Assembly (NCBI RefSeq): GCF_006345805.1
Contig: NC_043007.1
Location: 32,488,001 to 32,552,000, forward strand
Reading direction: 5' to 3'
DNA: 64,000 nucleotides
Source: Octopus sinensis
Lineage: Eukaryota
A model generated the notes under the pieces. It did not search any database. It saw only the letters and a list, made by a program, of their open reading frames with translations, and had not been told where the DNA came from. Below are positions 2,542 through 38,587 of this stretch, in pieces (the first letter of the stretch is position 1; each line of letters opens with the position of its first letter). A program made the translations under genes and the position numbers.

Positions 2542-2614
2542 GGGCAGTTTAGCTTAATGGTAAAGCACTTGACACATAATCACAGGGATGTGAGTTCAAG
2601 TCTCATGGCTGGCC
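2542..2614 (+). pseudogene. Degenerate tRNA-like sequence (Met-like; tRNA pseudogene or orphan SINE head)
   Basis: 73 nt with A-box TAGCTTAATGG, B-box GAGTTCAAGTC, T-stem GTGAG/CTCAT, acceptor stem 6/7 paired and CAT in the anticodon position; the anticodon stem is broken. Confidence 0.35.
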
Positions 2615-3084: not shown

Positions 3085-3502
3085 CTTTTATTCTTTTACT
3101 TGTTTCTGTCATTTGACTGCAGCCATGCTGGAGCACCACTTTTAGTCGAACAAATTGATCCCAGGACTTATTCTTTGTAAGCCTAGTACTTATTTAGTAC
3201 TTATTCTATCAGTCTCTTTTTGCCAAACAGCTAAGTTAACAGAACATAAACACACCAACATCGGTTGTCAAGCGATGGTGGGGGACAAACACAGACAAAT
3301 AACAAATACATACATGCACACACACACGCGTGCATGCGCGATGGACTTCCTTCAGTTTCCATCTACCAAATCCACTCACAAGGCTTTGGTCAACCTGAGG
3401 CTATAGTAGAGGACACTCGCCCAAGGTGGTACGCAGTGGGACTGAACCCAGGACCATGTGGTTGGGAAGCAAGCTACTTACTGCATAGCCACTCCTGACC
3501 TA
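3085..3502 (-). mobile_element. tRNA-derived SINE (family A, CORE-like middle, internal CA/TA microsatellite)
   Basis: Full-length reverse-complement match to 12549-12962. Confidence 0.9.
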
Positions 3503-4034
3503 TATTAATTTATATTGCAAACACCAGCTTAAAAATGACACAAACATTTTATTGAATTATTGGTTGTATTGTTTTCATAACAACTAGCTCCAATAGTCAA
3601 TATAGTCAACTTGTAGAGAACTAAGCAACAGTTCTCCAGTGAGCCAACTAATATATAAAAAGATAAGGTTTTTCCTATCATATATTTGAACATATTTAGT
3701 GCATCTGTGGTTCTGTCAATCTGCTAGAGGTTTTACTTCTTCAACCTTTGTGCATCAATTGTTTGTAATGTCCAAAAAGAACTGATTCTTGTACATTCAT
3801 TCAATAATAATAATAATAATAATAATAAAACAAAAACACCAGGACTTACAAACACATATAACATACAGAAAATTGCACTACTAGGCACTGCACACATCCT
3901 ACGCAAAACACTTTCAATACAGTAACCATCAGAGCATCACAACAAACCACAGCATATACCCAAGGCACACAGAGCTGCGCTCGGTAGTGAAGTGAAAGCA
4001 CGCTATAAAAATAAAACTACTGAATAATAATAAT

Positions 4035-11104: not shown

Positions 11105-11480
11105 TTTTATCTGTTTCAGTCATTTGATAGCAACCATGCTGGAGCACTTGAAGGGTTTTTAGTTGAACAAATTAACCCCAAGACATTTTTTAAAGCCTAG
11201 TACTTATTCTATTGGTCTCAATAGTTGAACCACTAAGTGAACACACCAATACCAGTTGTCAACCAGTGATGGGAGTACAAACATATGCACAAAGACATAC
11301 ACGCATAAACACAGACAATCACGATGGGCTTCTTTCAGTTTCTGTCTACCAAATCCACTCACAAGGCTTTGGTCGGCCTGCGGCTATAGTAGAAGACAAT
11401 TGCCAAAGGTGCCACATAGTGGGACTGAACCCAGAACCATGTGTTTTAGAAGCAAGCTTCATACCACACGGCCACTCCTT
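11104..11480 (-). mobile_element. SINE family A
   Basis: Reverse-complement match to 12549-12962. Confidence 0.9.
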
Positions 11481-12150
11481 GAGTGTATGTGTGTGTGCAT
11501 GCGCATGCAAGAATGGTCTGATTGGAACACTTTGGGAAATGAAATATCTAGTTTAAAATGAGAGAAAACTCTTCAAACCTGTCAACTCATATTTTCATAT
11601 ACATACTCTAAAACTAGTTTGATATCCAGTTAATGCTCATCAAAATATAACATGATGGACTGTTAAGTAGCTTACCTTCATTAAGTGTAAATTTATTTCC
11701 CTAAGATGTAAGAAGCTAAAAAGTGTGCACGTAATCCTAGCCACCACTGAGTCGAAAGCAAAATTACAGCAACATCAGAGAACCCAGCCGCTTTTCTATC
11801 ATTCATTTCTTGATCAATATGTATAGATGAGACTATAAAAATGGAATCAAACTAGGGTGGGACATGGGTGCCTTTCTTTGCATATATGTCTACTTATGCA
11901 GACATGTCAATAAAAAATGGATGTTTTGAGTTAACTTAAATAACTCATACCAGTTAAAATGTTTGTTTGCCTTCTTTTCAAAGATAATCTCATTTCATTT
12001 ACATTTAAGATAAGTAAGGTTATCAATAAACTAACGTAGACAACCTAGTCCATGTTTAGACACAGCACTAAAGCCTACATTTCTACTGCTTCAACCACAT
12101 ATCATAGCATCCAAGCATTTCAAAATAATTCACAAGATCATGAATAAATA

Positions 12151-12540
12151 GGCGCAGGAGGGGCTGTGTGGTAAGTGGCTTGCTTACCAACCACATGGTT
12201 CCAGGTACAGTCCAACTGCATGGCACCTTGGGCAAGTGTCTTCTATTTATAGCCTCAGGCCGACCAAAGATTTGCAAGTGGATTTGGTAGGCGGAAACTG
12301 AAAGAAGCCTGTCGTGTGTGTGTGCATGTATGTTTATGTGTCTGTGTTTGTCCCCTCCAACATTGCTTGACAACTGATGTTGGTGTGTTTACATCCCTGT
12401 AGCTTAGCAGTTCAGCAAAAGACACCGACAGAATAAGTACTAAGCTTACAAGGAATAAATCCTGGGGTCGATATGCTCAACTAAAGGCAGTGCCCCCAGC
12501 ATGGCACAGTCAAATGGATGAAACAAGTAAAAGAATAATA
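12151..12540 (+). mobile_element. SINE family A, first of a head-to-tail pair
   Basis: GGCGCAGG head, CACCTTGGGCAAGTGTCTTC CORE-like block, tail GAAACAAGTAAAAGAATA. Confidence 0.9.
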
Positions 12541-12548
12541 TATATATG

Positions 12549-12962
12549 GGCGCAGGAGTGGCTGTGTGGTAAGTAGCTTGCTAACCAACCACATGGTTCC
12601 GGGTTCAGTCCCACTGCGTGGCATCTTGGGCAGGTGCCTTCTGCTATAGCCCCGGGCCGACCAATGCCATGTGAGTGGATTTGGTAGACGGAAACTGAAA
12701 GAAGCCTGTCGTATATATGTATATATATATGTATGTGCGTGTATGTTTGTGTGTCTGTGTCTGTCCCCCTAGCATCGCTTGATAACCGATGCTGGTGTGT
12801 TTACGTCCCCGTCACTTAGCGGTTCGGCAAAAAAGAGACCGATAGAATAAGTACTGGGCTTACAAAGAATAAGTCCCGGGGTTGAGTTGCTCGATTAAAG
12901 GCGGTGCTCCAGCATGGCCGCAGTCAAATGACTGAAACAAGTAAAAGAGAAAGAGAGAAAGA
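12549..12962 (+). mobile_element. SINE family A, young full-length copy
   Basis: A-box-like TGGCTGTGTGG, B-box GGTTCAGTCCC, internal (TA)/(TG) tract, tail GTAAAAGAGAAAGAG. Confidence 0.92.
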
Positions 12963-15900
12963 TATATATATATATTACTGGTTTAACCAACTTAATGTTT
13001 GCTGCATGGAGCCAAAATAGGCTTCTTTTTTTTCTTTTCTTTAATGATAGTCTACAATGAAGGCATTAGGCTTCATTATTTAATGTTGAAAAAGTTGGTC
13101 TTGGTAGTCTCTGACAATTTGCATTACAGTAGAGTTAAAACACAACCTTAGAAAGAATTAAAGAATAAAAGCAGTGAAAAACAAAAAGTTTCCAGGGTAC
13201 TGAAATATGAGTAATTATACGGCAAACCAGCCAGCAGATATCTATTTACTATCATTCACTACCTGTAACATTGGCCTGTACAGCACCTAATTTAAATTAC
13301 AAATGAATTAGGCCATTGAGTTGGGTGTCTTTGTCAATGATACAACCCAGTAGCCGTGATGGGATTCATGATGTACTCATGGCTGAATTAACCTAACCAT
13401 TCACCCTGTAAAAAAGGGCCACTTCTCTTACGTTCACCTTCCAGTCACCTGATCGTGTGCCCTGACATTTCTTCACCATCTTCTCTCCTTTTCCAGCTGA
13501 AGTAGAAATGTATCTCCTTTTCCAGCAAAACACCTGTTTCTGTCTCTCTCTGTCATACTCCAGTTTCTCATCTCTTGGCATACAGTCGCTTCCTTTAACA
13601 CTTCACCTCTACCGTCCTTAGTTGAGGAGGGGGTCCTATCTTGCAAGTTACTTGGTGAACTACTAGTGCCAGTAATACCTAAAAATCACCCAGAACACTG
13701 TGAAGAGGTTGGCATTAGGAAGGGCATACAGCCATCGAAACCCTACCAGTATGGGAAAATGAATGTTGAACAATGCTGAGGATGGTTTCAAGTTTAGAGA
13801 AGTCTACTTAACTGAACAGCAATAAAGTGCTAGTTCAGCATGCGTACACACACAAATAAATATACTATTTCACAAACTCTATCTAGAAAGAAAGAAAGAA
13901 AGAGAGAAAGAAGGAAGGAAGAAAATTCAATTTTAATTTCATAAGTTCATCAAGTTCATCAATTATAACAACTGCAGAATAATGAAGCCTTAAATTTTTA
14001 AGGTTGTCATATTATGCCTCAAGAAAACCATATTAAAATTATACATCGTTATGTCTGTAATAAGGACAAAAGTATTTTACTAAATTCTTCATTATTTTCA
14101 AAATTAATTAAAACAAAAATAGTGTATTCCAACAGAAACATGGCAAGAAAAGGGTTAAGAAAAATCCAGAGAAATTTACGCAGAATCTCACTGAGTCACA
14201 CTTCAAACTCCTCAGTAAATATAATTTAATTCCTGTCCCTGCTCATCTAAGGGGTGAGCAGGCATCACCCACTTCCTTTTACTTCACTACTTAAATATAG
14301 CAGTTCCAAAAGGACTTTTTCTTTTTTTCCTTTCTTGTGAGTCAAATATTTCTCAGCTGCTCAAAAACTCAACAAGCATTTACGGGTTACATAAGGAAAT
14401 AGTCATCAAGATTCAAGTTTTCTTAGAAACTATTCTATCTCTGCATATGTCAAGAACACTTTTTCAACCATCTACCTCGTAGTATAAAGATTAATATCCA
14501 CTGGCCTATATCTATCAACCTTGTAACTGAGCACAATAAATTGTGGGATGTTTAAAGTATGAGAGAACGTGGGCTTCAGCAGCTGGGAAGCCACTCAGAC
14601 GGTACTTTCAGTTCGAATCAGCGACTTTCTAACCATTGTTCATCAACTGCAATTTGTCAGTTCGATGTTCATGTTACAGTAGTTTCCGTATTTCAATGTT
14701 TGTAGCTGATGTCTTGGTGAGCAGGAGGGTTAAGTACCCCAGATCTTATTTTCCACACAAGACATACAAAAACACGAGGGGGACATTTAAAAAGAAATAC
14801 AAAACAAGAGATATTGGCAAGAACTAAAAGTTAGTTTGAGGTCAAATCATACAAAATAAGACAGAAACTGTGAAACTGAGGTGGGTTCTTAGTAAGATTT
14901 TCTGTAAACAGGAATCATTTGGAACATGCTTCCATAGACTGTCTGACTTATAACATAATTACAAACATCTTGAGTAAGAAGAAGTGGAAGACTATAATAT
15001 TTACGAGGAGATAATGCTGATTATTTTAAGAGGTGTGCTCGTTTGGCAAATGACTGAATATGAGGCTGTAGATGTAGATTATGTAGTGTGTAATATACCT
15101 GATTAATATGTACCAACAAGCCCTTCGTTAAAACAGAACTTCTGTAAAAGCTATGTATAGCTTCAATTGTAAGTCATTTTGACGTCAAATGTTTACTCTT
15201 GGGTAATAAATCAAAAGTTATCATCAAATGCCAACAAGGACAAGATTTTGTAATTCCATATTTAGGTAACAACTACCAAGACATATAACGTATATATGCA
15301 CACACAAGGAGACAGAGGTACGTACACACACACGAATACATAAATGTGTAGAATACAAATGCACATACATGCATACATATCTATGTGCATATACACACTG
15401 ACCCACATACATGCAAACAAACAAAAAGAATGCAGTTCGGATAATGGACAGAGTCAATGACTATTGAAAAGGTTGCAAGACACAATGAAAATTTTACAAA
15501 AAATAAATAAGCAGAAATCGAACCGGTGAGTGTGTTAAATACTAAGGTACTAAAAGAGAATGACTCTCCTCCAGACACAATATATATACACACACACACA
15601 CCCTCTCCTCAAATTACAATCTATGCAACATATGACCATCTGCACTTACGACCACAAAAAATAAGGAAATAAAAAATAAATAAAAAATTGATTTTTGGGC
15701 GTTGGGCAGCTGTGTGTAGGATAACTATGGCAGCATTTGGCAACGCAGGCTTCCTTCAGACCCAGGTATCCACTGCCTGTCACTGACTCTCACTCAGTCA
15801 CTTTCAAATATCAGTTGTGTTTGAATGGAAATAAGTGTTGAAAAATATAAATCCAACACATCACCAGATTGACCTATGACCTGTCAGTCAGAACGGAACA

Positions 15901-16133
15901 GGGTCGTAAGTTGAAGAGGTGTGTGTGTGTACATGCACTCTACTAATATACATCTAGTCGGAAGTTTCTGTTTTCTATCTTTCTTGACCCCGCCCTCCCA
16001 CCCCTCTACCAGAACCGGAAGTTTCTGTTTTCTATCTTTCTTGACCCCCCCCCTCACCCCTATGTAGGGTTTATTGTGATCATATAGCGCAAAAACTTTG
16101 AAATTTATGCAGGTTGTAGTCTAGAGTCTCAGT

Positions 16134-19100
16134 ATGATATCTGGCAAATGCAAGCTTTCTTTTCAGGTACAGAACACTGCGGCCCCTCATCCCAGGGTCT
16201 CAGAGGCCCACACCTCCCACACCCTCAGGGTAGGCACCCTCAACGTTGGCACATTGAAAGGTAGGTCTGGCGAGATAGTCGAGATGCTTGAACGGAGACG
16301 TGTTGATGTATGTTGTATGCAAGAAATAAGGTGGAGAGGAGGATCTGCTAGGGTCCTCACAGGCAAGGGACACAGGTACAAGATTTTCTGGGCAGGGAAC
16401 ACTGACGGGGTTGGTGGCGTGGGTATAATTATCGCTGAGAAATGGATAGATAGAGTAATTGAGGTAATCAGAGTAAGTGACAGAATACTTAAGATTAGAA
16501 TAGTGCTTCATAATAGATTAGCAACCATATATCGTCGGCCTATGCCCCTCAGCCAGGGCTACCTGATGGACAGAAAGACAGTTTCTATGACACCCTACTG
16601 CAGACCACCTCATCGACGAACGACAGGGACCTTCTCTTTGTGGCTGGTGATTTCAATGGGCATGTTGGACGACATGCTGGGGGCTTCCATGGCGTACATG
16701 GAGGCTACGGTTATGGTTCCCGCAACGAGGAGGGAACCAGGCTGCTGGAGTTCTGCGATGCGAATAGTCTTATGGTCTGCAACACTAACTTCAGGAAACC
16801 AACAAGCCACCTGGTCACCTACCGATCGGGCCGGCATACTAGCCAAATCGACTACATCCTTGCCAGAAAAAGGGAAAGATGGCTGCTTAAAAATGCCAAA
16901 ACCTTCCCAGGCGAAGAATGCACCCCACAACATAGACTGGTAGTTAGTGACTTTAGGATCAGGACTAAGAGGGCGACTAGAAGACGACCAACATGGAGAA
17001 GAGGGTCTGGAAGCTTAAAGCCCCTGCGAATGGACAGAGATTTAGAGATATGTTACTTGAAGCCTTTGACGAAGTGGAAGGGGGTATAGCTACACATGGG
17101 GTAGAAGACAACTGGACGTTTCTGAGGGACAACCTGCTGAAAGCCGCTGACCAGATCTGTGGCTGGTGCAAAGTCCCCTTAAGACCCAAAATAACGTGGT
17201 GGTGGAACAATATTGTTGACAGGGCTATTAGACAAAAGAAACAGGCTTGGAAGGCCTGGAAGAACGGTGGTAGCAGGGAAGGGTATCAGACTGCCAGAAG
17301 GGAAGCTAGGAGACAGGTCTATCTAGCCAGAGGGGAAGCAGATAAGAGAAAATTTGCCAATGTCCTGCGCCGTGAGGATGAAAGACTTGAGGTATTTCGT
17401 GTTGCAAGACAGTGTGTGAGAGAGAATCGTGATGTGGTAGGGAGAAATGTGTTCGCATGGAGGATGGTTCACTTGCGCTAAATGAGGATGCAAAGAGAGA
17501 AGCTTGGAGACGCCACTATGAAAGGTTACTGAATGAGGAAAATGAATGGGATAAAGAGAGTCTGCCGAATGTTGACCCTACAGAGGGACCAGCTATCCGA
17601 GTTGATAGTTCCGTGGTAGCTAAGGCAATTAGAAGCATGAAGGCAGGGAAAGCCCCAGGCCCATCAGGAATTACTGCAGAGATGCTCAAAATATCTGGCA
17701 GTGTCGGCTATAACCTAGTCACCCGTATAGTCAACCAGGTGATACACGAAGGAGTCATACCCAATGACTGGTGCAGCAGCATACTAGTCAACTGCTACAA
17801 AGGTAAAGGTGATGCCCTAGATACAAATAATTACAGAGGTATCAAGCTGTTGGATCAAGTAATGAAGGTTACGGAGAGGGTCATAGCCCAACTAATCAGA
17901 GAGAGAGTTAGTTTAGATGAGATGCAGTTTGGGTTCGTGCCAGGAAAAAGTACCACTGATGCTATATTCCTGGTAAGGCAGCTGCAGGAGAAATACCTAG
18001 CCAAAGATAAGCCCCTGTACCTGGCTTTCGTTGACATGGAGAAAGCTTTTGATAGGGTCCCCCGATCCCTTATCTGGTGGTCAATGAGGAAACTAGGGAT
18101 AGATGAATGGCTGGTGAGGACTGTGCAAGCCATGTACAGAGATGCCGTAAGTAAGGTTAGGGTTGGCAACATGTACACAGAAGAATTCAAAGTAGAGGTT
18201 GGGGTCCACCAGGGTTCAGTACTCAGCCCCCTCCTATTTATCATAGTACTCCAGGCAATTACGGAGGAATTCAAGACAGGCTGTCCCTGGGAGCTCCTCT
18301 ACGCTGACGACCTTGCTCTTATTGCTGAGTCACTATCAGAACTGGAGGAGAAGTTCCAGGTGTGGAAGAGGGTTTAGAATCAAGGGGCCTTAGAGTCAAC
18401 CTAGCTAAAACCAAAGTACTAATAAGTAGAAAGGTAGACAATCCACAAATATCTTCAGGAAGATGGCCCTGCTCGATCTGTAGAAAAGGTGTAGGTAGAA
18501 ACTCTATAAGATGTACCCAGTGTAAGCTATGGACACATAAGAGGTGCAGCAATGTCAAAGGTAGGCTAACTGGGAAGATAGTTTTTGTATGTGGCAGATG
18601 CTCGGGAGCATTAACCCCGAAAATCTGCAGAAAACAACTTCCGTCACTTTCCAGGGGGAAAAACTAGAAGTAGTTGATAGCTTCCGTTATCTAGGTGACC
18701 AAGTCAGTAGTGGGGGTGGGTGCGCTGAAAGTGTAACTGCTAGAATAAGAATAGCCTGGGCAAAGTTTAGGGAGCTCTTACCTCTGCTGGTGACTAAAGG
18801 CCTCTCGCTCAGAGTAAAAGGCAGACTGTATGATGCGTGTGTACGAACAGCCATGCTACATGGCAGCGAAACATGGGCTGTGACTGCTGAGGACATGCGT
18901 AAGCTCGTGAGGAATGAAGCCAGTATGCTCCGATGGATGTGTAATGTCAGTGTACATACTCGACAGAGCGTTAGCACCTTGAGAGAAATGTTGTACCTAA
19001 GAAGCATCAGTTGTGGTGTGCAAGAGAGACGATTGCGCTGGTATGGTCATGTGGCGAGAATGGATGAAGATAGGTGTGTGAGAAAGTGCCAATCCCTAGC

Positions 19101-19253
19101 AGTTGAGGGAACCCGTGGAAGAGGTAGACCCAGGAAAACCTGGACGAGGTGGTGAAGCACGACCTTCGAACTTTAGGCCTCACTGAGGAAATGACCAGAG
19201 ACCGAGACCTTTGGAAATATTCTGTACGTGAGAAGACCAGGCAGGACAAGTGA
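16134..19253 (+). mobile_element. RTE-clade LINE ORF (APE endonuclease, reverse transcriptase, PHD-type finger), six single-base frameshifts
   Basis: Six abutting ORFs stitch into about 1,040 codons. EN motifs TLNVGTL, MQE, SAYAP, GDFNGHVG, QIDYIL, PQH; RT motifs KAPGPSG, NYRGIKLL, FVDMEKAFDRV, GVHQGSVLSP, YADD (about 18300); C-terminal RGRGRPRKTW...DL; stop TGA at 19251-19253. Confidence 0.97.
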
Positions 19254-19337
19254 GCCCAGCCCACTTATGAATGCCTTTCCTCCCTTGGACACAAAGACCA
19301 GTTGAGGCAAGCGAAGTCGATATAGAACCTCATCCGA

Positions 19338-19795
19338 CGACAGACACCCATCCCAACCCCCCATGCTTGCGAAGACATGTTGGGGCAAGCGAAATCGAAA
19401 TCGAAACCGAATTGAACCAGCCAGGATCCCTGGCCTGGTGGTGGTACGTAAAAAGCACTATCCGACTCGGGGCCGTGGCACGTAAAATACTCCAATGCGA
19501 CCGTACGACAGGCACCCATGCCAACCCCCTTTGCTTGTGAAGACATGTTGGGGCAAGCGAAATCGAAATCGATTTGAACCAGCCAGGATCCCTGGTCTGG
19601 TTGGTACGTAAAAAGCACTATCCGACTCGTGGCCGTGGCACGTAAAATACTCCAATGCGACCGTACGACAGGCACCCTTGCCAACCCCCTTTGCTTGTGA
19701 AGACATGTCGGGGCAAGCGAAATCGAAATCGAATTGAACCAGCCAGGATCCCTGGTCTGGTGGTACGTAAAAAGCACTATCCGACTCGTGGCCGA
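19338..19795 (+). repeat. About 2.8 tandem copies of a 160-168-bp unit in the LINE 3' UTR
   Basis: CGACAG(A/G)CACCC unit starts at 19338, 19506 and 19666. Confidence 0.9.
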
Positions 19796-20079
19796 TGCCA
19801 GCACCGCCTCGACTGGCTTCCGTGCCGGTGGCACATAAAATACACCAATCTGACCGTGGCCGTTGCCAGCCCCGCCTGGCACCTGTGCAGTGGCACGTAA
19901 AAAGCACCCACTACACTCACGGAGTGGTTGGCGTTAGGAAGGGCATCCAGCTGTAGAAACATTGCCAAATTAGACTGGAGCCTGGTGCAGCCTTCTGGCT
20001 TCCCAGAACCCCGGTCGAACCGTCCAACCCATGCTAGCATGGAGAACGGACGTTAAACGACGATGATGATGATGATGAT
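19796..20079 (+). mobile_element. 3' terminal tail of the RTE LINE ending in (GAT)n
   Basis: Contiguous with the LINE 3' UTR; ends GCTAGCATGGAGAACGGACGTTAAACGACGATGATGATG. Confidence 0.9.
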
Positions 20080-20279
20080 TAACAAGTGTTAATTTGTAAG
20101 AAAGCATAAAATGGTTAATGAATTCCATCTCCATCACATATAATAAGCAGCTACTTTCCAATATTTTCATTCGGGGAAACAGTATAATAAGAACCATGGA
20201 TCACTAAGTAAACCAATTAGCTCTACAATCTGTAAAAGTATTCCAATTTCTTCAACAAACCATCCTTGTTTTTCTCAAT

Positions 20280-20510
20280 TTAACCCTTTTGTTACCAACC
20301 TGGCTGAAACCGGCTCTGGCTCTTTAATATACATGTCTTGTTTTCATAAGCGTTGAATTAAAAATCTTCCACCAAACCTTAGTCACAATTTATGTTCCTA
20401 ACACTAGCTTAATGATGACAAAGTTATATTACTAAATTCTTTGTTATATTTAAAATTAATGGAAAGAAACACAGAGCATCTCAAAATAAATTCAGTAATG
20501 AAAGGGTTAG
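20280..20510. mobile_element. piggyBac-type MITE, second family
   Basis: TTAA|CCCTTTTGTTAC ... GTAATGAAAGGG|TTAG terminal inverted repeats. Confidence 0.65.
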
Positions 20511-21258
20511 ATTGATATGAAAAAGGCATAAAGAATTAACAATCAGCAAACCCTATTGTTTGTTTCTCTTTCTCAACTAAAGGCATCTGCTTCAGTGAGT
20601 GTCCCTTGATGAAGATTATGTAGGAGGTGCAAAGTTACTGATCTGCAGAATTTAATCTACTGCAATTTTATCTAAACTTGAATTTATTTATTTCCGAAGT
20701 ATATTCAGTTAATTTAGATGTTTGAACAGAGGTCTTCATCTTAATCTTTTTACTTTTTAAATTGTGTAAATGAATCTTATAAAAATTCAAATTTCAAACG
20801 GTCTAAATTTCACTGAGGCCATCACTCAGAATCAAAGATGACGTGATGGCAGGTATCAGGCTTTCACTAATTACTTCAGCAGGTGTGTAAGTAGTCATGA
20901 GCAGATAGCCACCTCAACCCTTAGCTTGTACTTTCTTTATCAACCCAAAAAGGATGAAAGGCAAAGTTGACCTTCGTGGAATTAGAGCCCAGGATGCAGA
21001 GAAGTCAAACAAATATCATAATACATTTTATCTGAAGCTCTAATAACTCTGCCAATCAAAAGCCTTAAGATTTCACTACACAAAATCAAAATCAATCTTA
21101 GATAAGTTTGTAAAATTGGAGCAGAATTGTTTTACCCCATTCAAAAGCAAGAGTACTTCTCACTTTTTGGAGTTAGCTAGCACTCATTCAAAATATTTAT
21201 TATTATATCATGTACTTAATATATTATTAATATTTACTGCAAGAATAATACAGAAGAA

Positions 21259-21463
21259 CTTTTTAAACCAACCATATCTGGCCTAAATATTCTACCTTGT
21301 TTTATTTTCAAACTAATCAGATATAGCCTCTCACACCTACACTACAATGTCGTTCTAAAATTAAACAATTACATCATCAAAATCTTAAAGCTATGAGATA
21401 ATGTATAATTAATTCAAAATTATGTGAATAAATAAGTATAACATTTGAATGCTAAAGGGTCAA
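21259..21463. mobile_element. piggyBac-type MITE, partial
   Basis: CCATATCTGGCC...AAATATTCTACC...GAATGCTAAAGGGT; matches 54197-54428. Confidence 0.65.
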
Positions 21464-22245
21464 GCAAGAATGATAAATTACAATATCAGGATTTGGTACA
21501 TATAATGCTCATTAACCATGAAAAAAATTGCTAAAAATATCTAATTTGATGATAGTAACTGACACTAGAATTGGTTGCCCCTGGTGCTGGTTCCAAAATA
21601 ATAGTGCACCAATTAAATAAGAACTATTTGGATTTCAGATTTCAGATTTACTTCATTGAGAGACATGCAGGGTTCATGAAGAAAAAAACCGAGTCAGTAT
21701 TTCCCCTGCATATTGCAAAATGGGGAATATTCCATTTGCCAAGGTATATCATAAGAACTAGCCTCCCTGTGCTGGATAACTGTTAACCAAGGCATAAAAG
21801 AATCTATGTGTTGTGTGTGAGTGCATGCACACAAGCTGCCCGGTTGAATGAATCCACCGATGTAAAGCTCAGCTTCTAACATTCACAAGATTTTGTTTGT
21901 AATAAAGACATCAGGGAGCAATTTTATTTTGTAAGTCATTATCAGAAGCAACAAGAGGAAAAGATATTTTTATGTCAAGTTATTTCTACTCCCATAATTA
22001 ATCATGGAAAATATATATCTGCATAGACGGTGTATGTTGAGAATGCAATTTTTTTTTTTTTCTTATATACACCATTTTATCTGCAGAAAAGACCTCATCT
22101 CAAAATCATAAACTTCTGAACTTTATGCAGGGAAAAAGGAAATATTCTTAGTTGCACTGACAAAAATGAATTCTTTTAAAGAAAAACTAACATGATAAGA
22201 GTCACACAAACACATTATATATACATATATATATACACACACACA

Positions 22246-22408
22246 CGATGGGCTATTTTCAGTTTCCGTCTACCAAATCCACTCACAAGGCATTGATCAG
22301 TCCGAAGCTATAGTAGAAGACACTTGCCCAAGGTGCCATGCAGTGGGACTGAACCCAGAACCATGTGGTTGGTAGGCAAGCAACTTACCACATAGCCACT
22401 CCTGCGCC
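22246..22408 (-). mobile_element. SINE family A, 5' half
   Basis: Ends CCACATAGCCACTCCTGCGCC, the reverse complement of the head. Confidence 0.85.
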
Positions 22409-22709
22409 TATACATCTTCAGTGGATAAGAGGGACAGATGTCAATGCTAAACATGTCTGAGTCAGTGAAATTTACCATTTCAGAAGAAGATAAGTATCCA
22501 GAAATCAGAAGTGGGAGGCTGAAACTGCAGCAGGCATCAACAGACACAGCTTCATCCTGGTTCACTCTCCCGTTTAGCAACTCCTTCATCACAACAAAAA
22601 CACTCAAAGCAATCCTTTTCTTAACTTCATATCTTTGGGAAGTTTGTTTCCCTTCCGTAAACATGATAACAACAAGTACGGGCAATACAACCAGTATTAC
22701 TAAAAAAAT

Positions 22710-23420
22710 GTAGCAGATTGTCGTTGCTCATAATCCCTGCTGGACATATGAAAGGGGCAACAGTGGCGAGTGGGCCAGTTTTGTCGATTGTGCCCTGCTG
22801 GACATATGAAAGGGGCAACTGTGGCGAGTGGGCCAGTTTTGTCGATTGTGCCCTGCTGGACATATGAAAGGGGCAACTGTGGCGAGTGGGCCAGTTTTGT
22901 CGATTGTGCCCTGCTGGACATATGAAAGGGGCAACTGTGGCGAGTGGGCCAGTTTTGTCAATTGTGCCTTGCTGGACATATGAAAGGGGCAACTGTGGCG
23001 AGTGGGCCAGTTTTGTCGATTGTGCCCTGCTGGACATATGAAAGGGGCAACAGTGGCGAGTGGGCCAGTTTTGTCGATTGTGCCCTGCTGGACATATGAA
23101 AGGGGCAACTGTGGAGAGTGGGCCAGTTTTGTCGATTGTGCCCTGCTGGACATATGAAAGGGGCAACTGTGGCGAGTGGGCCAGTTTTGTCGATTGTGCC
23201 CTGCTGGACATATGAAAGGGGCAACTGTGGCGAGTGGGCCAGTTTTGTCGATTGTGCCCTGCTGGACATATGAAAGGGGCAACTGTGGCGAGTGGGCCAG
23301 TTTTGCCGATTGTGCCCTGCTGGACATATGAAAGGGGCAACTGTGGCAAGTGGGCCAGTTTTGTCGATTGGGAAGTAGTGCTTCTTTAGACTGGAGTTAA
23401 CTGTGGAGATGGAACCACTT
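22710..23420 (-). pseudogene. Degenerate duplicate of exon segment 26852-26989, expanded internally by the 58-bp array
   Basis: Left flank GTAGCAGATTGTCGTTGCTCATAAT vs exon GTAGCAGGTTGTTGTTGCTCATGAT; right flank TAGACTGGAGTTAACTGTGGAGATGGAACC vs exon TAGACTGGCGGTAACTGTGGAGATGGAACC. Exon Tyr TAT has become TAA (23386-23388), plus a 5-bp deletion. Confidence 0.85.
22735..23370. repeat. Minisatellite, 11 x 58 bp
   Basis: Unit CCCTGCTGGACATATGAAAGGGGCAACTGTGGCGAGTGGGCCAGTTTTGTCGATTGTG starts at 22735 and recurs every 58 bp to 23315; only a few substitutions. Confidence 0.97.
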
Positions 23421-23976
23421 TCAATGTCTCGACTCTGTAGTCTTTCTGCCCAATCTGTTAAGTACTAACAACATTTACGCCAGTGCAAGTTGCACCTTTT
23501 TCGTTCATACACTACACCCAGTGAGTGCATATTCCTTTGAAACAAAGTGCAATGTGTGCACTCGTGTTTGTTTTAAAACAATTTTAATGCTCTCGTTTCA
23601 TTTTTATATGTTACAAAACTTCTAAAAATCTGATGGTCTGCCATAACACTCTTGGCACTTTATTCACACAGATGTGAATTGAACCAGACTGAAAATCACA
23701 GAAATTCTCAGAAATTACAATATTACAACAGTGAATAAGTTCATCTAAGAATAATGATGATATATTATCCGTTAAAAAATGTTGTTCTCATAATACAAGT
23801 GCTATTTCACACAATCCCACACCTCATGTAATTGCTATGGAAACAATTATAATCACAGGAAAACATAGAATGTAATTTAAGTTTAACATGATATCAGTCT
23901 GAAGAGTTCCAATTTTTTTTAGAACCATCTCTACTTTTTTTTTCTTTTTTTTGGTTAAAATTATGACAAATATATA

Positions 23977-24199
23977 CAAGGGGGTGCTGAAAGGTTCCTG
24001 GCTTTAAGGGCATCGCAAAAGGCTTGGTTGGAGGCCCAACTTTCTGAGTTGTTTTACAGGGCTTAGTAAAACTGAAGGGTCACTGCAATAAGCATATAAA
24101 TCTCAAAGTGGAATGTGTTGACTAAAATCATAATTAACTGATCCTCCTGTGGGATTTTTTTTTTTTGTCCAAAGCCAGAAACTTTTCAGCATGCTTTCA
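23977..24199 (+). mobile_element. Mariner-derived MITE, complete
   Basis: TA|CAAGGGGGTGCTGAAAGGTTCCTGGCTTT ... AAAGCCAGAAACTTTTCAGCATGCTTTCA|TA, with a transposase C-terminal remnant inside. Confidence 0.75.
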
Positions 24200-24504
24200 T
24201 ACACAGCATGAAATAAACAAATTCCACCATAATATCGAATGAACGGGACAAGCCTATCATTGTCATCAATAATTGATACAAGGCAACTTTCAAGTCAATG
24301 GGATGTTACCTAGGTTGGCCTAAGCAAGCAGAATATGGCAGTGACAAGGTTCAACTCAAGACACATAAACCAAAATCTTTCAGGAATAAAACATTCATTA
24401 GCATTTTTAAAAAAAAAGAGCAATACAGTTAATTTAAAACAGGTTCTGAGAACATAAAAACCTGGAAAAAAATATTACGAAATGGAACTAAAAGTCTGAC
24501 TTAC

Positions 24505-27500
24505 CATTTTTGCGCTTTCTTCGTGTGAGGGTTTTTTCTTTTGCCTTACGAGAAGAAGTTTGCCTTAAAGGTAACACAGGTACAATGGGTTTTTCAACAT
24601 CGTTTTCTGTTGTTCCTTTATCAAAGAACTCCATAACTTCTCTTTCACCAGAGAAAGTTCGGCTCCTACCACGTGCTCGTTTTGCACGGGGCCCTCTACT
24701 GCCACGGCCTCCCCGCCCACGACGAGGACCCCGTCCAAACTCTACTGACTGTCTATGCATCTGATTGTCAGATTCAAAGTTATCACAAAGATTCTGAAAT
24801 AAATCTTCAACTGTATTAATACTGTTCTCCTCATCAGAAAAAGGGGTTGCAGGCTGATTCATGCCCAATGTATCATTCAATTTAGAACTGCCCAAATCTG
24901 TTGTAGTAGTAAGAGGTCTTTTATACCCAGTTCCAAAATCACCAACTGGCAAATTATTTAATATAGAATTATAAAACCTTGGATCATATTTCGTAGCATG
25001 GGTGCGTCTAGTAATATTAGAATAACTCAGGCTGGAGAGCGTCTCTGTTTTTTTACCTTGTAAGAAATTTATGTAGCTTTCTTGGAAAGCATCAAAACAC
25101 TTTTTGGATTTATTCTCCGTTTTTCTCAGCAGTTCACCATCAAGCATAACTTTATCTTGCAAGTGTTGGAATTCTTCATCAAACTCAGCCTGGAGTGTAA
25201 CAGCTATTACATTGGTAGGCATTTGTTTTTGTTCTGCTTTAGTACGACTTCTTTTTTGCTTTTTATCGGACAAAGAGAAGTCAGCAGAAATGGTAGCCAT
25301 AGCTGCTCCAATGGTCTCGTCTTCTTGAGAGAGCAACTGTCGCTTCGTATCAGCAGTGTTGGCATTAACTAAATCATCGAATTCGGGTGCATCACCATCT
25401 TTATCCATAGCTAAATCTTCAAAACTGTTAGAAGCAGGTACCAAATCTTTTGGCGTTGATACCTGAGAGAAGTTCATGTAAGATGGAGGAGGTTGCATTT
25501 GCAAAGATGCATTCTGCTTAGAAAGCGTCATACTGTCTTGGCACATTGGATCCTGCTGGTGCAAATTCATCTGGCCGGGGCCAAGTTGGGATGCCATCGT
25601 ATTAACATAAGATGATTCAGTCAAGCGCCTCATACCATAGTTCTGAATATCTGGTAGATCTGGCGTTGTTGTGGGTGGAGTTAAACTATCTGAGTATTGG
25701 TCAGTAATGGCAGATGGCTGTTCAATACGTTCAGAGAGAGGTGTAGCGGCACTGGGCATATCCTCCGATAAAACACCTTGTGGACTACCAATACTACCAG
25801 ATACTGATGGGGGGTGCATGTTTGTCACATGATCAGATCCATGTTGAGAGCTCTCAACATTACCTCGTACTGAAAACTGTTGCATACTTACAGGAGATGC
25901 ATCCTGGTGGTGGTCATTTAAGCGACCGACAGATAAAGAAGGGTCTAAAACAGGACTGACGTTCTGAACTTTGAGTCGCTGTTCGTCAACGTGGTCTTGG
26001 TAAGTGGGGCTCAGGGTATCTTCAGTTAATGGTTGTGGAGGAAGGGTGTCATGGCACTGCTGAGACATCACCTGTGCCATGTTGGGGAATACATTGGCTG
26101 TTCCTTGCGTCATATTTAGGGGTTCTTCATTAAATAAATGTTCTTGTCCAAGTTCAAGAGCTTTGTCATAAATTATGTCTTTCTTCTTGCGTCCACGTCC
26201 ACGTTTGGGTTTGGTTGTTGAATCAGCAACCGCTTGAACTGGAGGAGGTGCTTGCACTATAGTGGAACTGGGAAGAGGAGTCTGCGGGCTTCCAAGTGCT
26301 ATTGGAGCCTGCGGACTCCCCACACTGATAGGTGATTGCTGCATGGGACTGTGAACACTTTGAGAAAGTTGGCCATTATGCATGTTGTGTGCTGCTGGAA
26401 TAGTCTGAGGGCGTGAGGTGATACTCTGGACAGTCTGCTGCAGATCAGAAAGTGAAGGAGAGACTCCCTTATTGGCAGTACTGTGCAGCATGATATGAGA
26501 GGTTTCTTGAAGCAACACACTTTCTCGATTTTTCATATCTTGCATGCGGTCTTGACTAGATCCAATTGAAGCCAAATCTTGCAAAGAGACTGTACAGAAA
26601 GAATCCCCCTGTTGATGCTGTTGAGATGGTTGTTCGGAGAGTGGTTGAGTTGGACTAACAGGATCATAGCCCATCTCGGGTGTCACATGATTTACAGAAG
26701 AGTAAGTGGGAGCACTAGATGCTACAGAATAACTTTTAGTACTGATGCAGCTGTAGGGATCATACATGGGTGACTGTGAGCCAGACATATTTTCTAAGTC
26801 CTGGGGGGAAGAATAATTTGATGGTCTTGGTGTTGGAGGTTGAGAGAGGGGGGTAGCAGGTTGTTGTTGCTCATGATTCATGTTGGACATATTGTATGAA
26901 GAAGGCAACTGTGGCGAGTGGGCCGGTTTTGTTGATTGTGAAGTGGTGCGGCTATAGACTGGCGGTAACTGTGGAGATGGAACCGACTTACTACTAGGTA
27001 GAGAAGTTGAACAGTAGATAGGGTCTGGCTGGTAGGGGCTTCTTTGAGAAAGACTACTGATTGCTCTGTTGGTGCTGTGAGCTGGGGGAGGAATGTGTTG
27101 TTGGGGACTAGGAGACGCTGGCGCATAATTTCCTGGTCCAGAGAGCTCGTTAGTGAGATTTGCAAAGGGATTTGATGAGGTTGGGACAAAATTAGACAGA
27201 CTCCAGCTTTTGCTACTTGCTTCAGGAACATGAGGATTGGGTGACATAGGAGATGGGGTGAGGCTGCTGGCTAAATCTTTGCTTGAATGAAAATCTTGAT
27301 TGAAGAGAGATTTACTGTGAGCAGGAACTCCACTGTGAGAGGAGGTCACGTACCTCCCCGAGCTGTAACAGGTTGGTTGTTCTGCCGATGACCGAGGAGC
27401 TGAATCAAAAGGAAAAGAGGTGGGAACCGGTTTGTAATGTGATTGGCTAGGGAAGGATGATTGTAGATTCATACTATCCAAAAACTGAGTGACTGAATTG

Positions 27501-27600
27501 TGTAATGGATGGCCATAGTTTACTTGTGGAATACCCCCAAGACCACGAGCTGGTGGTAAACTTGTATGTGGGGAGAGAGATGGGGACAATGCCCCTAGAC
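24505..27600 (-). CDS. Large internal coding exon (1,032 codons) of a Ser/Pro/Gln-rich putative nuclear/chromatin protein; tentatively QSER1/PRR12-like
   Basis: 1,051-codon ORF in AT-rich DNA. Acceptor TTTCTTTTTTCTTTGTAG| (27601-27602) and donor G|GTAAGT (24504-24503); 3,096 nt, phase 1-1. AT-hook-like KPKRGRGRKKK, an RG-rich tract and basic TRRKRK. Family assignment rests on architecture and a recalled motif only. Confidence 0.88.
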
Positions 27601-27768
27601 CTACAAAGAAAAAAGAAAGAAAAAACATTGAGACAAATGCCAAAGGAAGTTATTGAATTTTGTGTTCGTATTTCTAGATAGAAAAAAAAAGGGTCAATAT
27701 TTGGAAAAGGATTCTCAAAACATAGCTATTTGGATTTTTAACAGTTTCTTTTTCAAACTAAATTACAA

Positions 27769-30371: not shown

Positions 30372-30766
30372 TCTTTACTCTCTTTCTTGTTTCAGTCATT
30401 TGACTGCGGCCATGCTGGAGCACCGCCTTTAGTCGAGCAAATCGACCCCAGGACTTATTCTTTGTAAGCCCAGTACTTATTCTATTGGTCTCTTTTGCCG
30501 AACCGCTAAGTGACGGGGACGTAAACACACCAGCATCGGTTGTCAAGCACAGACACACAAACATATACACACACACTTATATATATATATATATACATAT
30601 ATACGACAGGCTTCTTTCAGTTTCCATCTACCAAATCCACTCACAAGGCATTGGTCGGCCCGGGGCTATAGCAGAAGACACTCGCCCAAGATGCCACGCA
30701 GTGGGACTGAACCTGGAACCATGTGGTTGGTTAGCAAGCTACTTACCACACAGCCACTCCTGCGCC
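30372..30766 (-). mobile_element. SINE family A, young full-length copy
   Basis: Close reverse-complement match to 12549-12962. Confidence 0.92.
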
Positions 30767-31329
30767 TATTTTGTTTTTATAAAGGAAATCAATAACATTA
30801 AAATATAAAACATTAAATAACATACACTTTACATTGGAAATATAACGACCTAAGGTTTGTTTTTTGTTTTTGTTTTTTTCACTACACCTTTTCAGGTGAT
30901 CATGCATCTTTCCTGTCAAATTAATGTCTAACAGTCCAATAAAGAGCTTGATGATATACACAAAGTTGGGAGCGAACCAAGAAGATTGTTATAAGTCAAA
31001 CAAACTTAGATCATGCTTGGACTGTTTTTAAAACAGACACGAGTTTCTCCATCTGTTGTTAAGTTTAATATTTCCTGTCCATGATACTGTAACTAAAAAC
31101 ATGTAGCAAAAGATTTCAAGAGCTTTCCTTGAGGGTTTTCCCCAGCCATATTCCTTCATTCACATCCAACGTAGAACAAAACAGCTCATTTGCAATAATT
31201 GACTGAAATAATTAGTTTTTCTTATTCTGGTCAAGTGATGGACAACAGCTGTTGTCAGGTGTTTGTTTTACGTTGTGCCGTCAGTGCTTATCTAGCAACA
31301 CAGATAAACTAACAGAATTGATGGTATCT

Positions 31330-35592: not shown

Positions 35593-35958
35593 AGGCACAA
35601 AAACAATTAGAACATGGAGGAATTTGTAACTACCAAATAAGATATAAAAACAGAAAAATAGAAAAGGGTAATGATATGAAAAGAAAATTGCATTACTAGC
35701 AGGAGTAAAAAAAAAAAATGAACCCTTAAAAAGCATCCACAGTTGGAAAAAAAACCAAGATGAAATTAACATAGAGCCTACAACCAGAGAAACTGCTGCT
35801 CTCATCAAATAACAACCGATGTTGGAATGATTTTGGTTGCAAAGATTGTGAGAGGAATGTTGTCACTTAATTGCAAGTTCTCAGGCAAGGGACAATGTGG
35901 GGAAGGGGAGAAAAACTAAGTGAGCACAGTGTAACTGGCAGTAAGGAGGATTATTTAC

Positions 35959-36015
35959 CTGTTCCAAGTCCTTGATCCAGTAGCGGCAAGTCATAACGGT
36001 TAAGGCAGGAAACAG
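35959..36015 (-). CDS. Candidate 57-nt symmetric coding exon upstream of the large exon
   Basis: Acceptor GATTTTCCAG| and donor CAG|GTAAAT; open in phase 1: (A)VSCLNRYDLPLLDQGLGT(G), which joins in frame to (G)LGALSP of the large exon. Confidence 0.5.
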
Positions 36016-37021
36016 CTGGAAAATCACGATTTTAACGCAGTTTGTAAGTTTTCAGTTATTAATTGCTACTGAAAAGCACAACCTACTCGCCCATCCACCC
36101 ACTCACTCTATGGTTTATTCTTAAATAAAATGCATAACAAAATTGCTTTGGGAATGAAATGAGATTTGTTTTAAAGCTTCAATTAACACAAGCAACTTGT
36201 CATAAAGAGCAAATTGTTACTACATAAATGACATCTTGACTTTCATTTAGTCCCAATGTTTTTAGAGTTATTAATATTTCAGAAGCACAGTTTTTAAAAG
36301 CTAAATTTAAAAAGTAAAAATTTTTTTAATGAAGCAAGCAAAAAAAAAAAAAAAAAGTGGTGGAAGGAACTTACTGAAAACCTCGAAGACTATTTTATAT
36401 CAAATGGGCATTAAATTATTTTTTTTTTTTTTTTTTATCCAATACTAAACATAATACAAATACACCTAAATCTGTTTAAGATTTGCATTTGACAAAATAG
36501 TTCTTCCTAATTAACTTTATTTTCAATTGAGAATTTCAAGAATTATTTTCCTACAATATAAAAGGTTTTTTAATGATTATGAGATATTAAATTCTAAACA
36601 ACATAGAGGAAATAATATATGAAATCTAGCAACGTATATTTTAAAAACCATTTATATTGAGTTTATTATGATTTGTGTATATTTTAGGAGATATATTTTA
36701 GCAATTAGTGAAATTATTTATTAACTTATATATTGCATTAAACATGTGTACGATTAATTTTTTATCCCGTTAAATTACTATGTACTGCTGCTGTTTTATT
36801 TTCAATTAGCAAGACCATGGAAATTCCAATTTTATAAATTTTCTCATTTCTGTTTTGATGCAAAAATTCATAACAATGTTTCGATATATTTTGTTGATTA
36901 TGGTTTTGATATCACTCCACAGTTAAAGTTGATTAAAGCATAACACTCAAACATGAGTATGAAGAATAAAGAGCAAAAATAAAAACCCTTTCATTTTATG
37001 GTTTATATCAAAAAATACCAT

Positions 37022-38163: not shown

Positions 38164-38427
38164 TGAAAAAAAAAAAGATTCTATTAGCATAAAGAGAACA
38201 TCGTTATCATTATTTCAATGTCCACTTTCCCATGCCTGCACGGGTCAAATGGAATTCACCGAAGTAGATTTTCTGCAACCTGATGCCCTTACTGTTAACA
38301 AATCCCTCTCGTTTCCAAGCAGGGAATCATTTCCTCACAGCCAGATATGTTTGCACAAAAGTGACATTCATTTACAACCATTGTGTGATGCAAAGACAAG
38401 GAGACATAAAAAAAACACACACACACA

Positions 38428-38587
38428 ACAGGCTACTTTCAGTTTCCATCTACCGAGTCCACTCAAAAAGATCATGGTCGGCCCAAGGCTACAGTAGAAG
38501 ACACTTGCTCAGGGTGCCATGCAGTGGGACTGAACCCTAAATCATGTGGCTGGAGAGGAAACTTTTCAACTACACAGCTATTCCTGT
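38428..38587 (-). mobile_element. SINE family A, 5' half
   Basis: TTTCAGTTTCCATCTACC...GTGCCATGCAGTGGGACTGAACC. Confidence 0.75.

What the first reader, a model, noticed from the sequence alone, without database searches (positions are those of the whole stretch)
22710..23420. Minisatellite born from a degenerate copy of the host gene's own coding exon
Seen: exon segment 26852-26989 (VPSPQLPPVYSRTTSQSTKPAHSPQLPSSYNMSNMNHEQQQPAT) is duplicated in the same orientation about 1.1 kb downstream of the exon's donor site. The copy has a TAT>TAA change and a 5-bp deletion, and its central 58 bp is amplified 11 times almost perfectly. The flanks have diverged noticeably from the exon while the units are nearly identical. 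Inference: an old intragenic micro-duplication followed by recent or ongoing array expansion or homogenisation. It could be a length-polymorphic VNTR, a splicing-factor decoy, or a gene-conversion/deletion partner for the real exon. I do not recognise this as described.
Basis: partly seen in the sequence, partly recalled or inferred. Interest (0 to 1): 0.72.

Follow-up and report, generated by a model that had tools for sequence, protein, structure and literature searches.

The report
Intronic minisatellite seeded by exon fragment
A 133-base decayed copy of part of an Octopus sinensis gene's own coding exon sits 1.1 kb into the next intron, and 58 bases of it have been amplified into 11 near-identical tandem units; this is a real but probably functionless minisatellite whose source sequence can still be identified.

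Summary
Window 22735-23372 holds exactly 11 head-to-tail units of 58 bp, with 8 substitutions in 638 nt and no indels. With its two single-copy flanks (22709-22734 and 23373-23424) the array reconstructs a ~133-bp copy of exon segment 26853-26989 (E 1e-22). The copy has the same orientation as the exon and starts 1,084 nt past the donor of a 3,096-nt exon on the minus strand.

The gene is the Octopus sinensis QSER1/PRR12-like DUF4211 gene; the exon translation is identical to XP_029642576. The copy differs from the exon at 17 of 133 sites, spread evenly over codon positions, and carries TAT>TAA and a 5-bp deletion. All unit-versus-exon differences are shared by all 11 units, so decay came first and amplification later.

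The assembled O. bimaculoides orthologous intron lacks the copy. It has a 139-bp SINE fragment where the window has a 9.9-kb TE-rich block (13624-23489), and the array lies at the exon-proximal edge of that block. No other copy of the unit exists in 183 kb examined.

I found no sign of function: no RNA family match, no excess folding, no gene conversion into the exon. My verdict is an ordinary neutral minisatellite with an unusually traceable, exon-derived origin. Genome-wide dispersal and copy-number polymorphism could not be tested.

The parts
22735..23372 (-). Minisatellite: 11 complete 58-bp units. Consensus on the + strand: CCCTGCTGGACATATGAAAGGGGCAACTGTGGCGAGTGGGCCAGTTTTGTCGATTGTG.
   Evidence: TRF; unit-by-unit listing (8 substitutions, no indels; T28A shared by units 1 and 6); the repeat finder family D1.
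23373..23424 (-). Single-copy 5' flank (gene orientation) of the pseudo-exon patch. It contains the TAT>TAA change at 23386-23388.
   Evidence: Alignments; blastn 23327-23420 vs 26895-26989, 85.3%, E 2e-24; tblastn 75% over aa 267-298.
22709..22734 (-). Single-copy 3' flank (gene orientation) of the pseudo-exon patch. It ends ...CTGCTACA and is followed by T7.
   Evidence: Alignments; blastn 22710-22792 vs 26853-26940, 80.7%, E 2e-17.
26853..26989 (-). Source segment inside the coding exon (VPSPQLPPVYSRTTSQSTKPAHSPQLPSSYNMSNMNHEQQQPAT).
   Evidence: The segment is identical at all 17 copy-variant sites in the O. bimaculoides exon.
24505..27600 (-). 3,096-nt coding exon of the QSER1/PRR12-like DUF4211 gene (O. 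sinensis LOC115217116).
   Evidence: ORF; homologues; identity to P0058; splice sites.
13624..23489 (.). 9.87-kb TE-rich block present in the window. The O. bimaculoides assembly has a 139-bp SINE fragment here (L002 29484-29622). The array lies at the exon-proximal edge of the block.
   Evidence: Synteny; no Ns at the junction; sensitive blastn; boundary alignments.
16134..19155 (+). Degenerate non-LTR retrotransposon (APE endonuclease, reverse transcriptase, PHD-like finger) inside the block, antisense to the gene.
   Evidence: ORFs; Pfam PF03372 and PF00078 (1e-26); relatives at most 65% identical.
22204..22411 (.). Copy of a ~210-bp dispersed SINE, 300 bp beyond the array. At least 8 copies occur in the window.
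   Evidence: blastn; inverted pair with 12542-12730.

Best explanation
This is a neutral, lineage-restricted intronic minisatellite with three inferred steps.

1. Seeding (inferred). About 133 bp from the middle of the gene's own large exon was copied, in the same orientation, into the following intron 3.4 kb away. I think a short templated patch laid down during repair of a DNA break, or a local replication template switch, is most likely. The junctions do not look like retrotransposition.

2. Decay (shown). The patch decayed as non-coding DNA. It has 17 substitutions spread evenly over codon positions, a stop codon and a 5-bp frameshifting deletion.

3. Amplification (timing shown, mechanism inferred). 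Much later an internal 58-bp segment was duplicated in tandem and expanded to 11 units. The likely mechanisms are replication slippage, unequal sister-chromatid exchange or gene conversion. The units have stayed 98.7% identical to their consensus.

The array has no demonstrated function. Its expected properties are copy-number variability and a GC-rich, exon-like island in an AT-rich intron of more than 24 kb.
For: - Array anatomy.
- Homology to the exon only.
- Direction, exon to copy. The exon segment is conserved in distant cephalopod proteins. The copy shares the Octopus-specific Thr codon that L001 lacks.
- Loss of coding constraint. Substitutions fall 6/5/6 over codon positions. Twelve of 15 changed codons change the product (11 amino-acid changes and 1 stop). 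There is also a frameshift.
- Order of events. Every unit carries the same 8 differences from the exon and the same deletion, and post-amplification variation is 8/638.
- No retroposition hallmarks. There is no poly(A) at the 3' end in either orientation and no flanking target-site duplication (criteria from PMC5110952).
- Not dispersed as far as could be seen. There is no other copy in the 64-kb window, the 98.7-kb O. bimaculoides locus or the 20-kb L001 locus.
- No sign of function. There is no Rfam match. Folding z-scores are 0.44 (DNA) and 0.19 (RNA). None of the O. sinensis or O. vulgaris isoforms read contains array-derived sequence (P0058, P0053, P0056, P0059).
Against: - The seeding mechanism is not shown. 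The junctions are old and show neither clear microhomology nor filler.
- The patch lies only 70 bp from the edge of a 9.9-kb TE-rich block absent from the O. bimaculoides assembly. It may have arrived with, or because of, other events there.
- There is a timing conflict. Divergence from the exon is 12.8% (95% CI 7.6-19.7%). That is about three times the ~4% per-lineage intron divergence since the O. sinensis/O. bimaculoides split. Yet O. bimaculoides lacks the patch.
- Neither published signature of minisatellite birth is present: no 5-10-bp flanking direct repeats and no truncated terminal unit (models as summarised in PMC3389668).
- Genome-wide dispersal, copy-number polymorphism and transcript effects were not testable here.
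Confidence: 0.7

Rival explanations
1. The patch plus array is part of a mobile or composite element, comparable in layout to SINE-VNTR composites. Alternatively it came in with the 9.9-kb TE-rich block from another locus. In either case the exon fragment was captured by a transposable element, and the unit exists elsewhere in the genome.
For: The array lies 70 bp inside the edge of a block that O. bimaculoides lacks. The block contains a LINE, several SINEs and another tandem repeat. A SINE copy lies 300 bp beyond the array. TE-internal segments do form minisatellites in this same window: the 27-bp x 3.3 array at 45634-45722 is made of SINE sequence.
Against: Neither the unit nor the ~300 bp and ~70 bp immediately flanking the patch match anything else in the window or in 98.7 kb of O. 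bimaculoides. There is no target-site duplication or poly(A) at the patch ends or at the block ends. The patch is closest to this gene's own exon, 3.4 kb away and in the same orientation, which favours a local event. A search with the array's translation found nothing and a metagenome scan for the unit junction found nothing; both are weak tests.
Confidence: 0.13
2. The array is functional in cis. It could act as a reservoir of exon-like binding sites (a decoy or enhancer for splicing factors that define the 3.1-kb exon), or as a source of cryptic 3' splice sites or an alternative exon.
For: The units derive from exon sequence and keep exon-like composition: 55% GC and positive GC skew in a 30-35% GC intron. 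Each unit contains a pyrimidine-rich stretch ending in CAG (GCCCCTTTCATATGTCCAG|CAG), read directly from the sequence. The minus-strand frames stay open over 199-240 codons.
Against: Open frames are expected for a 58-bp unit derived from coding DNA; I estimate roughly a 6% chance for any such unit. There is no plausible donor inside the unit, judged by reading the sequence. None of the O. sinensis or O. vulgaris isoforms read contains array-derived peptide. The array is absent from the O. bimaculoides ortholog, whose exon is 97.6% identical and is spliced the same way. There is no excess structure. The patch accumulated a stop and a frameshift before amplification.
Confidence: 0.05
3. The array, or its copy number, is an assembly artefact.
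For: None directly. Tandem arrays are error-prone in assemblies, and no reads were available here.
Against: The single-copy flanks are 12% diverged from the exon, so this is not a mis-join of exon reads. The units carry 7 distinct substitution variants and no indels, and all are exactly 58 bp. That is not the pattern of a looped consensus.
Confidence: 0.05

Closest known systems
Minisatellites / VNTRs that arise by tandem amplification of a segment of pre-existing unique or TE sequence (birth models of Haber & Louis 1998 and Taylor & Breden 2000, as summarised in PMC3389668 and PMC6947457)
   Same: Head-to-tail array with a unit in the 10-100 bp range. It is amplified from a segment whose unamplified form is still visible in the flanks. 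The units are highly homogeneous compared with the age of the parent sequence. It is intronic and GC-rich.
   Different: The parent sequence is a decayed copy of the host gene's own coding exon, not a TE or anonymous DNA. Neither birth signature is visible: there are no 5-10-bp direct repeats bordering the unit and no truncated terminal unit (exactly 11.00 units). Polymorphism was not tested.
Class 2 templated sequence insertions (patches of genomic or transcript sequence used to repair double-strand breaks; Onozawa & Aplan 2016, PMC5110952)
   Same: A short (~133 bp) patch templated from transcribed sequence. It has no target-site duplication, no poly(A) and no endonuclease-site signature, and it lies wholly within one exon.
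   Different: The donor is only 3.4 kb away in the same gene and in the same orientation, which would also fit a DNA-level replication template switch. No clean empty-site allele is available, and the junction features are eroded. TSIPs as described are not followed by tandem amplification.
SVA-type composite retrotransposons, whose internal VNTR sits beside SINE-derived parts and which can pick up host exon sequence (from my own knowledge, not tested here)
   Same: A VNTR adjacent to a SINE copy, with host exon-derived sequence involved.
   Different: No other copies were found in the sequence available. There is no poly(A) tail and no target-site duplication. The exon fragment is from the gene in which it sits.

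Membership tests
Minisatellite / VNTR | Head-to-tail tandem array with a unit of roughly 10-100 bp | tested here: met
   58 bp x 11.0 copies, 97% matches; register confirmed.
Minisatellite / VNTR | Copy number varies among individuals | not testable with these tools
   Only one assembly of this species was reachable. The O. sinensis and O. vulgaris loci could not be fetched because the gene range exceeds 100 kb.
Haber-Louis minisatellite birth | Amplified segment bordered by 5-10-bp direct repeats (the array ends with an extra copy of the short repeat) | tested here: not met
   The unit junction is GTG|CCC. The left flank ends ...AAT and the right flank starts AAG..., so there is zero shared bases at either border. 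Later mutation could have erased a short repeat.
Taylor-Breden slipped-strand birth at non-contiguous repeats | Terminal unit incomplete (shorter than the others) | tested here: not met
   The array is exactly 638 bp = 11 x 58. Both terminal units are complete and continue into exon-homologous flanks.
LINE-mediated retrocopy / class 1 templated insertion | Target-site duplication of at least 5 bp, a 3' poly(A) tract, and insertion at a TTTT/A site | tested here: not met
   In gene orientation the copy ends ...CTGCTACA followed by T7, not A-rich sequence. The other end has no A run. No duplicated flank was found. Criteria are from PMC5110952.
Class 2 templated insertion (break-repair patch) | Short templated patch without TSD or poly(A), with end-joining features (microhomology, microdeletion, filler) at the junctions and a matching empty site | tested here: inconclusive
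   Absence of TSD and poly(A) fits. There is possible 4-nt AAGT microhomology at the 5' junction. No clean empty site is available, because O. bimaculoides lacks the whole surrounding 9.9 kb.
TE-derived or dispersed satellite | The unit matches a repeat family present at other loci | tested here: not met
   There is no other match in the 64-kb window, the 98.7-kb L002 locus or the 20-kb L001 locus. There were 0 hits for the translated array and for the unit junction in metagenome contigs. No whole Octopus genome was available, so this is a limited test.
DUF4211 / QSER1-PRR12-like gene (host gene) | Full-length product carries Pfam PF13926 (DUF4211) and matches named QSER1-like proteins | tested here: met
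   The exon is identical to O. sinensis XP_029642576. Cluster members and mollusc homologues carry PF13926, and one is named 'glutamine and serine-rich protein 1-like'. The domain itself lies outside the window: the exon alone has no Pfam hit.

The most novel reading that the evidence does not exclude
The array is maintained because it works in cis on its own gene. Eleven exon-like units 1.1 kb past the donor of an unusually long (3.1-kb) exon would titrate or recruit the splicing factors that define that exon. Alternatively they would supply regulated cryptic acceptors in an intron of more than 24 kb. Copy number would then tune the splicing or expression of a QSER1-like chromatin gene. That would be an example of a gene building a regulatory repeat out of its own coding sequence.
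Probability: 0.04. Interest if true: 0.65.

Novelty: new member of a known kind. Interest (0 to 1): 0.3.

Why it matters
The origin of minisatellites is rarely observable, because the unamplified parent sequence is usually unknown (PMC3389668). Here three things survive together: the parent (a dated, decaying copy of a conserved exon), the exact 58-bp segment chosen for amplification, and the complete flanks. The order and relative timing of copying, decay and amplification can therefore be read directly. The two published birth signatures can also be tested, and both are absent. This makes a tidy case study and a candidate length-polymorphic marker for the O. sinensis / O. vulgaris complex. 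It does not, on present evidence, reveal a new mechanism or function.

Tried and rejected
- O. sinensis and O. vulgaris genomic loci. I tried to fetch them to compare copy number and found them unreachable. The gene ranges are 137 kb and 135 kb. The shorter isoforms and the window ORFs next to or in the array are not on record. XP_014781450 is not on record either.
- Third close species (Logan contigs L003/L004). The contigs stop 163 bp past the ORF end, short of the array position.
- Protein search with the 240-aa array ORF: 0 hits.
- Metagenome scan for the unit junction: 0 hits.
- Protein search with the LINE reverse transcriptase. I hoped for an annotated nested gene in O. vulgaris that would bring the array in its flank. 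The best hits were only 63-65% identical, so no ortholog was found.
- Rfam on the whole window: only a weak tRNA-like hit far away.
- Hairpin or structure-driven slippage, or a structured RNA: rejected, with z-scores of 0.44 and 0.19.
- Period set by the exon's internal SPQLP..Y direct repeat: rejected. The two CCACAGTT motifs are 60 bp apart and one lies outside the unit (read).
- LINE 3' transduction or template-switch chimera: rejected. The LINE is on the opposite strand, its 3' end is 3.4 kb from the patch, and there is no poly(A) or TSD at the block edge.
- Remnant of a larger exon duplication: rejected. Homology stops sharply at both ends of the 133 bp.
- Literature searches for exon-derived minisatellites or Octopus minisatellites found no direct precedent in the held library.

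Full report
**1. What is there**

TRF reports one strong array in the region: 22735-23370, period 58, 11.0 copies, 97% matches, score 1223. Read in register, it is exactly 11 units of 58 bp (22735-23372). There are 8 substitutions against the consensus in 638 nt and no indels. One variant (T28A) is shared by units 1 and 6, and the terminal unit 11 carries two private changes.

A blastn search of 22000-24400 against the whole window finds only one other sequence related to the array and its immediate flanks, at 26853-26989:
- 23327-23420 vs 26895-26989: 85.3%, E 2e-24.
- 22710-22792 vs 26853-26940: 80.7%, E 2e-17.
- Each internal unit: 87-89% over 46 bp.

nhmmer with the reconstructed monomer gives the same single target at E 1.1e-22. 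This is far beyond chance.

**2. The host gene and the geometry**

A 1,051-codon ORF on the minus strand (24488..27643) is 98% identical to O. bimaculoides XP_014781450. Over the exon proper it is identical to O. sinensis XP_029642576. O. vulgaris differs by one residue. The window is therefore O. sinensis.

Full-length homologues carry Pfam DUF4211 (PF13926), and one mollusc homologue is named glutamine and serine-rich protein 1-like. The exon alone has no Pfam match.

The exon runs 27600..24505, with acceptor ttgtag| and donor G|gtaagt. The copy begins at about 23424-23420. That is 1,084 nt into the following intron and 3.4 kb from its source, in the same orientation. The next coding exon is not in the window, so the intron is longer than 24.5 kb.

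**3. Anatomy of the copy**

Collapsing the array to one unit gives a ~133-bp sequence colinear with the exon from GGTTCCATCT to CTGCTACA. Homology ends abruptly on both sides.

Against the exon the copy has 17 substitutions (12.8%; exact 95% CI 7.6-19.7%) and one 5-bp deletion. The substitutions fall 6/5/6 on codon positions 1/2/3, with 11 transitions and 6 transversions. Twelve of the 15 changed codons change the product: 11 amino-acid changes and the TAT>TAA stop at 23386-23388. The copy has therefore evolved without coding constraint.

At all 17 sites the O. sinensis exon equals the O. bimaculoides exon. The changes are therefore on the copy's lineage, and there is no trace of gene conversion from the copy into the exon.

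The copy contains the Thr codon that Octopus exons have and that the distant cephalopod L001 lacks. Its last base (A in CTGCTACA) matches the O. bimaculoides/L003 state rather than the O. sinensis exon's C. The exon motif is conserved in distant cephalopod proteins, so the direction is exon to intron.

**4. Order of events**

All 8 substitutions that separate the 58-bp unit from the exon, and the 5-bp deletion, are present in all 11 units. The units themselves differ by only 1.25% from their consensus. Divergence from the exon is about the same in the unit (8/58) as in the flanks (9/76).

So the patch decayed first and a 58-bp internal segment was amplified or last homogenised much later. By simple proportion this happened in roughly the last tenth of the patch's history.

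**5. Comparative evidence**

I retrieved the O. bimaculoides locus (L002; CM046611.1:6057271-6155997). It is colinear with the window, with 80-94% identity over the aligned blocks. Substitution-only distance is about 8% in introns and 2.4% in the exon.

Colinearity runs from the exon through the first 1.0 kb of the intron to window 23490. It then resumes at window 13623. In between, O. bimaculoides has 139 bp of a dispersed SINE fragment (L002 29484-29622) with no N run.

The 9.87 kb specific to the window contains:
- a frame-broken LINE on the opposite strand, with APE, RT and a PHD-like finger;
- a 160-bp tandem repeat;
- several SINE copies;
- unique stretches.

The pseudo-exon array lies at the exon-proximal edge of this block, 70 bp from the breakpoint. 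nhmmer at E<=10 finds nothing but the true exon in all 98.7 kb of L002.

A much more distant cephalopod (L001, ENA; 75% nucleotide identity in the exon) has no copy and no array in 7.3 kb downstream of the exon. Its introns are not alignable with the window.

**6. An unresolved tension**

If the patch evolved at the intron rate (about 4% per lineage since the O. sinensis/O. bimaculoides split), 12.8% divergence puts its origin well before that split. Even the lower confidence bound is about twice the per-lineage value. Yet the O. bimaculoides assembly lacks it. I see four possibilities:
- O. bimaculoides lost the region, with a SINE at the scar.
- Its assembly jumped across the TE-rich block through a SINE.
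- The copying was error-prone.
- The locus mutates faster than the surrounding intron.

A third Octopus species or long reads would decide between these. I could not reach any. The O. sinensis and O. vulgaris gene ranges exceed the fetch limit, shorter isoforms and local ORFs are not on record, and the Logan contigs of a third species stop short.

**7. How it was made**

*Seeding.* The patch has no poly(A) at either end in either orientation and no target-site duplication. It therefore fails the criteria for a LINE-mediated (class 1) insertion and resembles class 2 templated patches used in break repair (PMC5110952). The donor lies 3.4 kb away in cis and in the same orientation, so a DNA-level template switch during replication or repair is equally possible. 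Because the patch lies within one exon, RNA and DNA templates cannot be told apart.

*Amplification.* The two published birth signatures are 5-10-bp direct repeats bordering the unit (Haber-Louis) and a truncated terminal unit (Taylor-Breden), as summarised in PMC3389668 and PMC6947457. Both are absent. The junction GTG|CCC shares no bases with either flank, and there are exactly 11.00 units. The first duplication is therefore unexplained. Later growth by slippage, unequal exchange or conversion is inferred from general knowledge. The shared T28A in units 1 and 6 hints at a 5-unit block duplication.

**8. Function**

I found no evidence of function:
- No Rfam family matches the array.
- Three units fold no better than shuffles, either as DNA (z 0.44) or as sense RNA (z 0.19).
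- None of the O. sinensis or O. vulgaris isoforms read (P0058, P0053, P0056, P0059) contains array-derived peptide.
- The long minus-strand ORFs across the array (199-240 codons) simply reflect a 58-bp unit with no stop in any sense frame.
- O. bimaculoides splices the same exon without the array.

Each unit does contain a pyrimidine-rich ...TCCAG|CAG acceptor-like motif and keeps exon-like composition (55% GC against 30-35% around it). A cis effect on splicing therefore cannot be excluded, but it is speculative.

**9. Dispersal**

I could test this only on 183 kb of Octopus and related sequence. Two weak database probes, the translated array and the unit junction in metagenome contigs, added nothing. 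All results were negative. A whole-genome BLAST remains the decisive missing step.

**10. Verdict**

The core interpretation, an exon-derived patch that decayed and then underwent recent 58-bp amplification, is supported.

It is best filed as an ordinary intronic minisatellite with an unusually legible, exon-derived origin. It lies at the edge of a TE-rich, lineage-variable part of a long intron of the O. sinensis QSER1-like gene. It is a new member of a known kind and of modest interest. Its value is as a clean natural example of minisatellite birth and as a likely polymorphic marker.

Noticed in passing
window 16134-19155 (+): Frame-broken non-LTR retrotransposon antisense to the gene. It has APE endonuclease, reverse transcriptase (PF00078, 1e-26) and a PHD-like zinc-finger ORF (18362-18667). 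The closest database proteins are only 63-65% identical, and many of them share the RT+PHD layout.
   Followed up: partly
window 19337-19794: 160-bp x 2.8 tandem repeat (93% matches) about 180 bp past the last LINE ORF. Part of it matches dispersed repeats in the O. bimaculoides locus.
   Followed up: no
window 45634-45722: Perfect 27-bp x 3.3 array whose unit is an internal piece of the common SINE (matches 22308-22357 at 92%). This is a second, TE-derived, very young minisatellite in the same window.
   Followed up: partly
window 22204-22411, 30567-30769, 12542-12734, 58362-58574, 12148-12331, 3289-3504, 11305-11479, 38415-38553: A ~210-bp SINE family with at least 8 copies at 80-87% identity. 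Copies 12542-12730 and 22227-22415 form an inverted pair (86%) bracketing most of the 9.9-kb block.
   Followed up: partly
window 13624-23489 vs L002 29484-29622: A 9.87-kb versus 139-bp length difference between the O. sinensis window and the O. bimaculoides assembly in the same intron. The O. bimaculoides side is a SINE fragment, so this could be a real deletion or insertion history, or an assembly jump.
   Followed up: partly
window 2543-2614 (+): Rfam tRNA match at 34.8 bits (gathering score 29), but ARAGORN calls no tRNA. It is probably a tRNA-derived SINE head or a decayed tRNA gene.
   Followed up: partly
window 35897-36016 (-): Sequence matching aa 44-74 of isoform X1 at 65% identity. 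These residues span the second of two similar 19-residue repeats (...NRYELPLLDQGIGT / ...NRYDLPLLDQGLGT). The O. vulgaris product P0053 lacks the second repeat, which suggests an alternatively used duplicated mini-exon. The gene also has paralogous internal exons further 3' in L002.
   Followed up: no
L003 / L004 (Logan SRR11869384, SRR11869394): A third, unnamed Octopus-type species whose exon is intermediate between O. bimaculoides and O. sinensis. It shares states with each at different variable residues. Its contigs end too early to show the array site.
   Followed up: no
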